Part shown: in pieces, positions 45,026 through 45,240 of the stretch
Numbering within the stretch: the stretch's first letter is position 1
Layout: each line of letters begins with the position of its first letter
From: Euprymna scolopes
Taxonomy: Eukaryota
Strand: one strand, 5' to 3'
Assembly: GCA_053919585.1 (NCBI GenBank)
Contig: CM132801.1
Length of the DNA: 64,000 bases
Notes under the pieces: model-generated
What the model saw: only the letters and a program-made list of their open reading frames with translations
What the model was told of the DNA's origin: nothing
The model's database searches: none
Translations under genes and position numbers: made by a program

Positions 45026-45043
45026 AGTCCTAGAGGCCAAATG

Positions 45044-45055
45044 GCCGAAATAGCT
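45044..45055 (-). other. atypical primer-binding site complementary to the 5'-terminal 12 nt of tRNA-Phe(GAA)
   Basis: Minus strand AGCTATTTCGGC directly after the 5' LTR; plus strand GCCGAAATAGCT equals the recalled metazoan tRNA-Phe nt 1-12. Confidence 0.75.
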
Positions 45056-45240
45056 TGTAAGAAAAAAATGTAAGGAAAAATTCAAGATGGCGCCCGACTC
45101 TCTCTTTAACACGGTAAGATATCCTCAACACAGCACAAGAAGCAACAGCCACACGATTCCCCAGCCAACTCAATCGTCACTCCCCCGTACCCACACAACA
45201 CGCAAACACGCGGGCGCTTATCTCCTGGATGCACGTTACA
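45056..45240 (-). repeat. 5' LTR
   Basis: Direct repeat of 41202-41386. Confidence 0.97.

What the first reader, a model, noticed from the sequence alone, without database searches (positions are those of the whole stretch)
45026..45060. LTR retrotransposon apparently primed by the 5'-terminal 12 nt of tRNA-Phe
Seen: the 5' LTR (…TTACA) is followed with no spacer by AGCTATTTCGGC, and there is no TGG (anti-CCA) start. Knowledge, recalled rather than looked up: metazoan tRNA-Phe(GAA) begins GCCGAAATAGCTCAG. The 12/12 match starts at tRNA nt 1 and stops exactly at the LTR edge. Rough chance for a 12-mer at this fixed position against ~50 tRNA 5' ends is 50/4^12, about 3e-6. Known priming modes are tRNA 3' ends, the 5' half of tRNAiMet cut in the anticodon arm (copia/Ty5), and Tf1 self-priming, where RNase H releases an 11-nt primer. 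Inference: the PBS mimics and displaces the acceptor 3' strand (UUUCGGC), the tRNA is cut after U12 in the D-stem, perhaps by the element's own RNase H, and the 12-mer primes minus-strand DNA. An overlapping GGCC-AUUU-GGCC hairpin could act as a switch. I know of no description of this mode but cannot search the literature.
Basis: partly seen in the sequence, partly recalled or inferred. Interest (0 to 1): 0.9.

Follow-up and report, generated by a model that had tools for sequence, protein, structure and literature searches.

The report
Retrotransposon primed by tRNA 5' fragment
A young, very abundant retrovirus-like jumping gene in this mollusc genome, and its relatives in barnacle, crab, whipworm and Hydra, carry a 12-base site that pairs with the first 12 bases of a transfer RNA exactly where DNA copying must start, which suggests a way of starting reverse transcription that I found described nowhere.

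Summary
On the minus strand lies a 4,039-bp LTR retrotransposon (41202-45240). It has 185-bp TG..CA LTRs, a 5-bp target duplication (AGGAG), a polypurine tract and gag-PR-RT-RNaseH-IN. The 12 nt directly after the 5' LTR (45055->45044, AGCTATTTCGGC) are the exact complement of nt 1-12 of the host's own tRNA-Phe(GAA).

The site is conserved in all sibling copies examined. An AGCTA-N5-GC 12-mer occupies the same position in eight relatives from barnacle, crab, whipworm, Hydra and two metagenome contigs. In seven of them it directly abuts the LTR; in the eighth the LTR end could not be set. Only 0-22 nt separate it from the gag ATG, which in several relatives leaves no room for a conventional PBS. 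No element has a complement of the site in its LTR, so Tf1-type self-priming is not supported.

Caveats:
- 57 of 100 sampled copies, and most RNA contigs, differ from the tRNA-Phe complement, nearly all by one mismatch opposite tRNA A5 or A6.
- The tRNA sets of the other hosts could not be checked.
- The cut after U12 and the priming itself are inferred.
- The proposed GGCC hairpin switch is not conserved in relatives.

This scan already noted the same lineage on other DNA of this genome (s1-292365), with the same reading. I found no published description. I rate it a new variant of tRNA-fragment priming.

The parts
45241..45245 (-). 5' copy of the target-site duplication AGGAG
   Evidence: Read directly. 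The same five bases follow the 3' LTR at 41201-41197.
45056..45240 (-). 5' LTR, 185 bp, TGTAAC...CTTACA. It belongs to a short-LTR subfamily with an internal deletion of about 194 nt relative to the 379-bp majority LTR.
   Evidence: Repeat D5 at 99% identity. Borders set by the TSD. Comparison with siblings.
45044..45055 (-). Primer-binding site AGCTATTTCGGC, the exact complement of nt 1-12 (GCCGAAAUAGCU) of host tRNA-Phe(GAA). Positions 45048 and 45049 are T/C polymorphic among copies.
45026..45043 (-). 18-nt leader between the PBS and the gag ATG. With the last three PBS bases it forms a GGCC-AUUU-GGCC hairpin (45046-45035).
   Evidence: It is invariant in 30 siblings but not conserved in relatives.
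44282..45025 (-). gag, 248 aa, with two CCHC zinc knuckles
   Evidence: Pfam zf-CCHC, E = 2.9e-11, two stretches.
42981..44372 (-). First pol piece: aspartic protease, reverse transcriptase and DUF7047. It lies in another frame than gag and overlaps it by about 90 nt.
   Evidence: Pfam RVP, RVT_1 and DUF7047. Homologues at 45-60% identity in several phyla.
42978..42980 (-). Single in-frame stop codon that breaks pol in this copy. Many other copies are open here.
   Evidence: ORF list and sequence. Other copies have 1042-aa open frames.
41385..42962 (-). Second pol piece: RNase H and integrase (H2C2 zinc finger plus catalytic core). The stop codon lies in the first bases of the 3' LTR.
   Evidence: Pfam rve and Integrase_H2C2; RNase_H just under its cut-off. 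The nearest solved integrases are retroviral.
41387..41396 (-). Polypurine tract AGGGGGGGAG, directly 5' of the 3' LTR
   Evidence: Read directly. Relatives have similar tracts ending GGAG or GGGAG before their LTR.
41202..41386 (-). 3' LTR, 185 bp, with 2 differences from the 5' LTR
41197..41201 (-). 3' copy of the target-site duplication AGGAG

Best explanation
The 12 nt after the 5' LTR are the element's primer-binding site, and the primer is the 5'-terminal 12 nt of tRNA-Phe.

Proposed steps:
1. Gag, with its two zinc knuckles, opens the acceptor stem and the 5' strand of the D stem.
2. tRNA nt 1-12 anneal to the PBS in a 12-bp RNA duplex (-18.7 kcal/mol).
3. The tRNA is cut between U12 and C13, leaving a 3'-OH exactly at the U5/PBS border.
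4. RT extends this 12-mer into U5-R.
5. The 12-nt PBS homology later serves the plus-strand transfer.

I think the cut is most likely made by the element's own RNase H at the end of the RNA duplex. That is what Tf1 does to its own 5' end, but here it would act in trans on a tRNA.

Shown: the anatomy, the exact host-tRNA complementarity, conservation within the family, the same design across phyla, and the absence of any alternative primer site.
Inferred: that the tRNA anneals, where and by what it is cut, and that it primes.
For: - The LTR border is fixed by the TSD, and the PBS starts at the next base.
- The match to host tRNA-Phe nt 1-12 is 12/12 and stops exactly at the border.
- All 30 fetched siblings, and 603 exact-flank copies genome-wide, keep the site. 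None has a TGG-type PBS.
- Eight relatives carry AGCTA-N5-GC at the same position, 0-22 nt before the gag ATG. They come from Amphibalanus, Chionoecetes (two families), Trichuris, Hydra (two copies) and two metagenome contigs. In seven it directly follows the LTR's terminal CA; four of these (L061, L062, L064, L065) have LTR borders confirmed by 5-bp TSDs. In L193 the LTR end could not be set.
- The constant AGCTA pairs with the widely shared tRNA positions U8-A9-G10-C11-U12. The variable part sits where the acceptor stem varies.
- The barnacle element and the JGI-contig element have the tRNA-Phe 12-mer. Drosophila tRNA-Phe has the same 5' end (northern probe in PMC7038984).
- The Hydra 12-mer equals the 5' end of Schistosoma japonicum tRNA-Lys(UUU) (PMC3653858).
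- No LTR contains a complement of its own PBS.
- The family is young (0.1-0.5% divergence). It has many open 1042-aa pol frames and is present in poly-A RNA libraries of two studies. The site therefore belongs to elements that still move or did so very recently.
- From established knowledge: Tf1 RNase H cuts an 11-bp RNA duplex to free an 11-nt primer, and copia, Ty5 and pCal use 5' tRNA pieces.
Against: - There is no direct evidence of a 12-nt tRNA fragment, of a cut, or of an RNA-DNA junction.
- 57 of 100 sampled copies differ from the tRNA-Phe complement. 53 of them carry a C opposite tRNA A5 or A6.
- The RNA contigs mainly show the TTCC form.
- The host has no tRNA gene starting GCCGGAATAGCT and only one starting GCCGAGATAGCTCAG.
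- The tRNA sets of crab, whipworm and Hydra could not be read.
- The crab 12-mer (GCCTCGATAGCT in primer sense) differs at 3 positions from the arthropod tRNA-Phe 5' end seen in Drosophila.
- PBS type follows element lineage rather than host.
- A 12-bp duplex must compete with a folded tRNA (-23.6 kcal/mol predicted).
Confidence: 0.62

Rival explanations
1. The site does bind the 5' end of tRNA-Phe, but as an anchor for tRNA capture, packaging or RNA folding. The actual 3'-OH for minus-strand synthesis would come from something else. One candidate is a host-made 5' tRNA fragment trimmed to 12 nt before annealing. Another is an unidentified primer.
For: - Exact complementarity to the tRNA says nothing about who provides the 3' end.
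- 5' tRNA fragments of 19-25 nt are abundant in at least one lophotrochozoan (PMC3653858).
- Single mismatches are tolerated in more than half of the copies. That fits a looser role than a primer duplex.
Against: - The site abuts the LTR in seven of the eight relatives, and the complementarity ends exactly at the border. That is the signature of the primer's 3' end.
- There is no room for another primer site: only 0-22 nt lie before gag.
- Known 5' tRNA fragments are longer than 12 nt and would leave an unpaired 3' flap.
Confidence: 0.15
2. The primer is another small RNA whose 3' end reads ...GCCGGAAUAGCU, or similar, and not tRNA-Phe. The 12/12 match of the TTT allele to tRNA-Phe would be secondary.
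For: - The TTCC allele is the commonest in RNA contigs and makes up 33 of 100 copies.
- It is also the site of an unrelated relative, L065.
- No host tRNA gene has that 5' end.
Against: - All five distinct 12-mers fit the tRNA 5' template: G1, acceptor stem, then U8 A9 G10 C11 U12.
- Two of them are exact known tRNA 5' ends.
- No candidate RNA is known.
- A C.A mismatch still leaves a duplex of -14.2 kcal/mol.
- In Ty1 and Ty3 the PBS is inherited from the parent and not corrected by the primer (PMC7472051). Mismatched alleles can therefore persist.
Confidence: 0.1
3. The 12-mer is a conserved cis-element of this clade with some other role, and its likeness to tRNA 5' ends is a coincidence carried along by descent.
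For: - AGCTA and GC are constant across relatives, and PBS type tracks element lineage rather than host.
- Host tRNAs were verified for one species only.
Against: - The chance of a 12/12 match at a fixed position is about 3e-6.
- A second, different 12-mer (Hydra) equals a published tRNA-Lys 5' end.
- An LTR element needs a primer at exactly this place, and none other is present.
Confidence: 0.07
4. Tf1-type self-priming: the 5' end of the element's own transcript folds back on the site.
For: - The site length (12 nt) resembles Tf1's 11 nt.
- Another LTR element in this same genome was read by this scan as self-priming (s1-288422).
Against: In six elements no stretch of the LTR is complementary to the 12-mer. 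The longest word complementary to the region around it is 7-9 nt and lies elsewhere.
Confidence: 0.02

Closest known systems
Tf1 of Schizosaccharomyces pombe and the Tf1/sushi group (self-primed reverse transcription; Levin 1995, cited in PMC7472051)
   Same: - A short PBS (11 versus 12 nt) pairs with the 5'-terminal nucleotides of an RNA.
- The primer must be freed by an endonucleolytic cut at the end of an RNA-RNA duplex.
- The PBS directly abuts the LTR.
   Different: - Here the paired 5' end belongs to a host tRNA, not to the element's own transcript. No complement exists in the LTR.
- The pol sequence is not close to Ty3-group proteins.
Drosophila copia, yeast Ty5 and Candida pCal (priming by a 5' piece of a tRNA cut in the anticodon arm; from established knowledge)
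   Same: The primer is a 5' fragment of a tRNA, not its CCA end, and the tRNA must be cleaved.
   Different: - Those PBSs pair with the internal region next to the anticodon arm (roughly nt 25-39) of tRNA-iMet or tRNA-Arg. Here the pairing is with nt 1-12 of an elongator tRNA, and the cut lies in the D stem.
- Those elements are Ty1/copia-type, with integrase before RT. This one has PR-RT-RH-IN.
Conventional tRNA 3'-end priming in retroviruses, Ty3/gypsy and BEL/Pao (for example, mouse IAP uses the 3' end of tRNA-Phe)
   Same: LTR, PBS and PPT anatomy; a host tRNA as the source of the primer; and the same tRNA species as IAP.
   Different: - The opposite end of the tRNA is used.
- There is no TGG start.
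- The site is 12 nt, not about 18 nt.
- Standard PBS finders compare tRNA 3' ends only (method in PMC13524379) and would report no PBS.

Membership tests
LTR retrotransposon (general) | Two direct LTRs with TG..CA ends, flanked by a short target-site duplication | tested here: met
   185-bp LTRs with 2 differences, TGTAAC...CTTACA, 5-bp TSD AGGAG.
LTR retrotransposon (general) | gag with zinc knuckles and pol with protease, RT, RNase H and integrase; a polypurine tract before the 3' LTR | tested here: met
   Pfam hits. PPT AGGGGGGGAG at 41396-41387. RNase_H scores 24.7 bits, just under its 25.8 cut-off.
Elements primed by a tRNA 3' end (retroviruses, most Ty3/gypsy, BEL/Pao) | A PBS next to the 5' LTR that starts TGG and complements the 3'-terminal nucleotides, including CCA, of a tRNA | tested here: not met
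   - The site starts AGCT.
- The only TGG in the 30-nt leader lies 16 nt from the LTR.
- Relatives have 0-22 nt between the 12-mer and gag, and no conserved TGG.
Tf1/sushi self-priming elements | A PBS complementary to the first ~11 nt of the element's own transcript (inside the LTR) | tested here: not met
   No complement of the 12-mer in the LTR of six elements.
Tf1/sushi self-priming elements | RNase H of the element cuts the RNA-RNA duplex to release the primer | not testable with these tools
   Needs an enzyme assay.
copia/Ty5-type half-tRNA priming | A PBS complementary to the tRNA region ending in the anticodon arm; Ty1/copia domain order (IN before RT) | tested here: not met
   Complementarity is to nt 1-12. 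The domain order is PR-RT-RH-IN.
Ty3/gypsy (Metaviridae) | PR-RT-RH-IN order with Ty3-type RT and RNase H and gypsy-type integrase | tested here: inconclusive
   - The order is met.
- There is no RT_RNaseH Pfam hit.
- The nearest solved RT and IN are retroviral (foamy virus, HIV, MMTV, RSV). Ty3 reaches only E = 0.06 for IN.
- No tree with reference superfamilies was made.
BEL/Pao (Belpaoviridae) | Pao-type protease (Peptidase_A17) and the DUF1758/DUF1759/DUF5641 modules | tested here: not met
   None of these Pfam families hit. The protease matches RVP.
Retroviridae and Odin/loki-type elements | A dual RNase H (tether plus new RNase H); env in retroviruses | tested here: inconclusive
   - There is no env.
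- Only about 130 aa, including DUF7047, lie between the RT palm and RNase H. That is too short for a thumb plus a full tether.
- The Odin paper does not report PBSs (PMC9040795).

The most novel reading that the evidence does not exclude
A metazoan-wide clade of compact (about 4 kb) LTR retroelements starts minus-strand DNA from the first 12 nucleotides of elongator tRNAs (Phe, probably Lys and others). The primer is released by the element's RNase H, which cuts an RNA-RNA duplex in trans after U12. This would be a priming mode between classical tRNA priming and Tf1 self-priming, and it is invisible to every PBS finder that looks only at tRNA 3' ends.
Probability: 0.45. Interest if true: 0.9.

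Novelty: new variant of a known kind. Interest (0 to 1): 0.8.

Why it matters
- Primer choice is a defining step of retroelement replication, and only a handful of modes are known. These are tRNA 3' ends, 5' halves of tRNA cut in the anticodon arm, and self-priming.
- A mode that uses the 5'-terminal 12 nt of a tRNA would add one. It would suggest how self-priming could have evolved from tRNA priming.
- It would point to a retroelement RNase H that cuts a host tRNA at a fixed place.
- It would link 5' tRNA fragments to retroelement control, as 3' fragments already are.
- Practically, annotation pipelines that test only tRNA 3' ends (for example the method in PMC13524379) will report these very abundant elements as lacking a PBS.
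- The family is young and transcribed in a cephalopod, so the question is experimentally open.

Tried and rejected
1. **Tf1-type self-priming.** I searched each of six elements for the reverse complement of its 12-mer, in the LTR and in the whole element. Nothing better than 2-3 mismatches turned up, and only in coding sequence.
2. **A conventional PBS further into the leader.** TGGCCTCTAGGACT lies 16 nt from the LTR. It is not conserved in relatives, whose leaders are 0-22 nt long.
3. **Gene-encoded tRNA variants as the source of the two minor PBS alleles.**
   - GCCGGAATAGCTCAG: 0 matches.
   - A looser Phe pattern: 0 matches.
   - A generic tRNA-shaped pattern: 0 matches.
   - GCCGGGATAGCTCAG: 0 matches.
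   - GCCGAGATAGCTCAG: 1 match.
4. **Identifying the tRNAs behind GCCTCGATAGCT and GCCGGAATAGCT by a metagenome scan.** The hits I read in full were bacterial-type tRNAs with encoded CCA (Phe, Thr, Asn). They say nothing about the animal hosts.
5. **The same 12-mers in the cephalopod genome.** There were single matches without a tRNA.
6. **More relatives from viral contigs.** None were usable.
7. **L068 (Pollicipes) and L071 (Trichuris).** No LTR pair and no 12-mer were found, so I left them out.
9. **RNA-run contigs.** They show presence and alleles, but no transcript start or end.
10. **Whether the PBS alleles arose repeatedly.** The 30-copy tree is too shallow to tell. U3 type and PBS allele can also be reshuffled by strand transfer between co-packaged RNAs.
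11. **Literature.** Eight full-text searches found no description of a PBS complementary to a tRNA 5' end. Older subscription papers are not covered.

Full report
**The observation**

Read on the minus strand, window 41202-45240 is a complete LTR retrotransposon of 4,039 bp.
- The two 185-bp LTRs run 45240->45056 and 41386->41202. They begin TGTAAC, end CTTACA, and differ at two positions.
- Both are flanked by the same five bases, AGGAG (45245-45241 and 41201-41197). This target-site duplication fixes the LTR borders to the base.
- A polypurine tract AGGGGGGGAG (41396-41387) precedes the 3' LTR.
- The coding part is gag with two CCHC knuckles (44282-45025), then protease-RT-DUF7047 (42981-44372), then RNase H-integrase (41385-42962).
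- This copy has one in-frame stop, at 42978-42980.
- Directly after the last A of the 5' LTR come AGCTATTTCGGC (45055->45044), then 18 nt, then the gag ATG (45025). There is no TGG at the border.

**The host tRNA**

- The window's genome is 5.9 Gb in 925 contigs. RNA runs that hold the element are labelled mollusc.
- It has about 696 matches to GCCGRRATAGCTCAG, against 1 for the control pattern, many in tandem arrays.
- ARAGORN calls those tested tRNA-Phe.
- One gene read in full is GCCGAAATAGCTCAGTTGGGAGAGCG...GGGTTTCGGCA.
- The site is therefore the exact complement of nt 1-12 of the host's own tRNA-Phe. The complementarity ends exactly at the LTR border, because the next tRNA bases (CAG) do not pair with ...ACA.

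**Siblings**

- The family is very abundant. There were 2,160 first-look candidates for a 396-nt query and 603 copies with exact flanks around the site. The RT search gave 29,249 first-look candidates, many with open 1042-aa pol frames.
- Copies differ by only 0.1-0.5%.
- Most have a 379-bp LTR. The window copy belongs to a small subfamily with an internal LTR deletion of about 194 nt.
- All 30 fetched copies keep the site and the invariant 18-nt leader.
- In the first 100 of the 603 copies the site is AGCTATTTCGGC in 43, AGCTATTCCGGC in 33, AGCTATCTCGGC in 20, and other in 4 (my count).
- The changes are confined to PBS positions 7 and 8, opposite tRNA A6 and A5.
- Contigs of poly-A RNA libraries from two studies cover the element and carry mainly the TTCC form (place 45048 A>G).
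- The host has no tRNA gene beginning GCCGGAATAGCT and a single one beginning GCCGAGATAGCTCAG. The minor alleles therefore do not mirror gene-encoded tRNA variants.
- Predicted duplex energies with tRNA nt 1-12 are -18.7 kcal/mol (perfect), -14.2 and -15.0.
- A review states that Ty1 and Ty3 inherit the PBS from the parent and not from the primer (PMC7472051). Under that rule mismatched alleles would not be corrected. I regard the alleles as tolerated mismatches, but this is not settled.

**Relatives**

The PR-RT piece has hundreds of homologues at 45-60% identity, all marked by Pfam DUF7047. They occur in Trichuris, Trichinella, barnacles, a crab, Hydra and many unnamed assemblies.

I fetched ten loci. 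Eight gave a readable 5' end. Seven of these are 4.0-4.6 kb elements with both LTRs; L193 is a 3.9-kb contig whose LTR end could not be set.

| Locus | Host | Sequence after the LTR |
|---|---|---|
| L062 | Amphibalanus | ...CTACA followed by AGCTATTTCGGC |
| L193 | JGI contig | AGCTATTTCGGC, 11 nt before gag |
| L065 | ENA contig | ...GACA followed by AGCTATTCCGGC |
| L061 | Trichuris | ...CCACA followed by AGCTATCGAGGC |
| L064, L070 | Chionoecetes, two different families | AGCTATCGAGGC |
| L063, L069 | Hydra | ...CTACA followed by AGCTAACCGGGC |

- In L061, L062, L064 and L065, 5-bp TSDs confirm the LTR borders.
- The distance from the 12-mer to the gag ATG is 0-22 nt. In several elements this leaves no room for a conventional PBS.
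- The constant AGCTA pairs with U8-A9-G10-C11-U12, which many tRNAs share. The variable five bases plus GC lie where acceptor stems differ.
- The Hydra 12-mer in primer sense, GCCCGGUUAGCU, is exactly the 5' end of tRNA-Lys(UUU) fragments of Schistosoma japonicum (PMC3653858).
- The Phe 12-mer is also the Drosophila tRNA-Phe 5' end (probe in PMC7038984).
- I could not read the tRNA sets of crab, whipworm or Hydra. The crab 12-mer differs at three positions from the arthropod Phe sequence.
- On an RT tree the PBS type follows element lineage rather than host, with weak backbone support.

**Rivals tested**

- Self-priming. None of six elements has a complement of its 12-mer in its LTR, so Tf1-type self-priming is not supported.
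- The hairpin. The GGCC-AUUU-GGCC hairpin is real and predicted stable in this family. No relative has it, so a conserved switch role is not supported.

**Mechanism**

An LTR element's minus-strand primer must present its 3'-OH exactly at the U5/PBS border. The only conserved non-coding element there pairs with tRNA nt 1-12. The simplest reading is that the tRNA is annealed through its 5' end and cut after U12, and that the 12-mer primes. I put this at about 0.6.

Tf1 frees an 11-nt primer by an RNase H cut at the end of an 11-bp RNA duplex. Copia, Ty5 and pCal use 5' tRNA pieces. Both statements rest on established knowledge; Levin 1995 is cited in PMC7472051. The present case combines the two. 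The nuclease, the cut and the priming are inferred.

**Classification**

- The domain order excludes Ty1/copia.
- No BEL/Pao Pfam modules and no Ty3-type RNase H hit were found.
- The nearest solved RT and integrase are retroviral: foamy virus and HIV RT; MMTV, RSV and PFV integrase. Ty3 is marginal.
- I leave the superfamily open.

**Novelty**

- Eight full-text searches found no description of a PBS complementary to a tRNA 5' end.
- A recent large survey searched only the 12 nt at tRNA 3' ends (PMC13524379).
- This scan had already noted the same lineage on another piece of this genome, and a follow-up agent reached the same reading (s1-292365). That is not independent evidence.
- My additions are the PBS allele survey, the host tRNA-gene counts, the RNA-contig allele, the explicit self-priming test, and the leader-length argument.

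Noticed in passing
window 45048-45049 and 603 copies genome-wide: The PBS is trimorphic in this family. Of the first 100 copies 43 have TTTCGG, 33 have TTCCGG and 20 have TCTCGG, while the 18-nt leader next to it is invariant. RNA contigs carry mostly the TTCC form. No host tRNA gene encodes the corresponding 5' end.
   Followed up: partly
L044 and L048 (G000 C18, about 100.27 Mb): In tandem arrays of tRNA-Phe genes, many copies are called by ARAGORN with anticodon AAA, not GAA. That is unusual for a eukaryote.
   Followed up: no
window 41385-44372 (minus strand): Pol looks closer to retroviral proteins than to Ty3. The integrase best matches MMTV, RSV and PFV integrases, and the RT best matches foamy virus and HIV RT. 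A DUF7047 module sits between RT and RNase H. The pol stop codon lies inside the first bases of the 3' LTR.
   Followed up: partly
window 45083-45094 (minus strand), inside the LTR: GGCGCCATCTTG resembles, from memory, a YY1-type GCCAT core motif of the kind that positions transcription starts in some retroelements. This was not tested.
   Followed up: no
window 45056-45240 versus siblings L007-L030: The window copy and five others have a 185-bp LTR that lacks about 194 nt present in the 379-bp LTR of the majority.
   Followed up: partly
window 43618-43715: One RNA-run contig (X8) skips 96 nt of the RT region. This is probably a deletion-bearing copy and not a splice.
   Followed up: no
window 46965-47555, 59011-59471, 48917-50516: Arrays of short tandem units (periods about 11 and 9 nt) and long (TA)n tracts lie downstream of the element on the plus strand.
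   Followed up: no
L061 (Trichuris suis) and L064 (Chionoecetes opilio): A whipworm element and a crab element group together on the RT tree and share the same 12-mer. This would fit horizontal spread or an old lineage.
   Followed up: no
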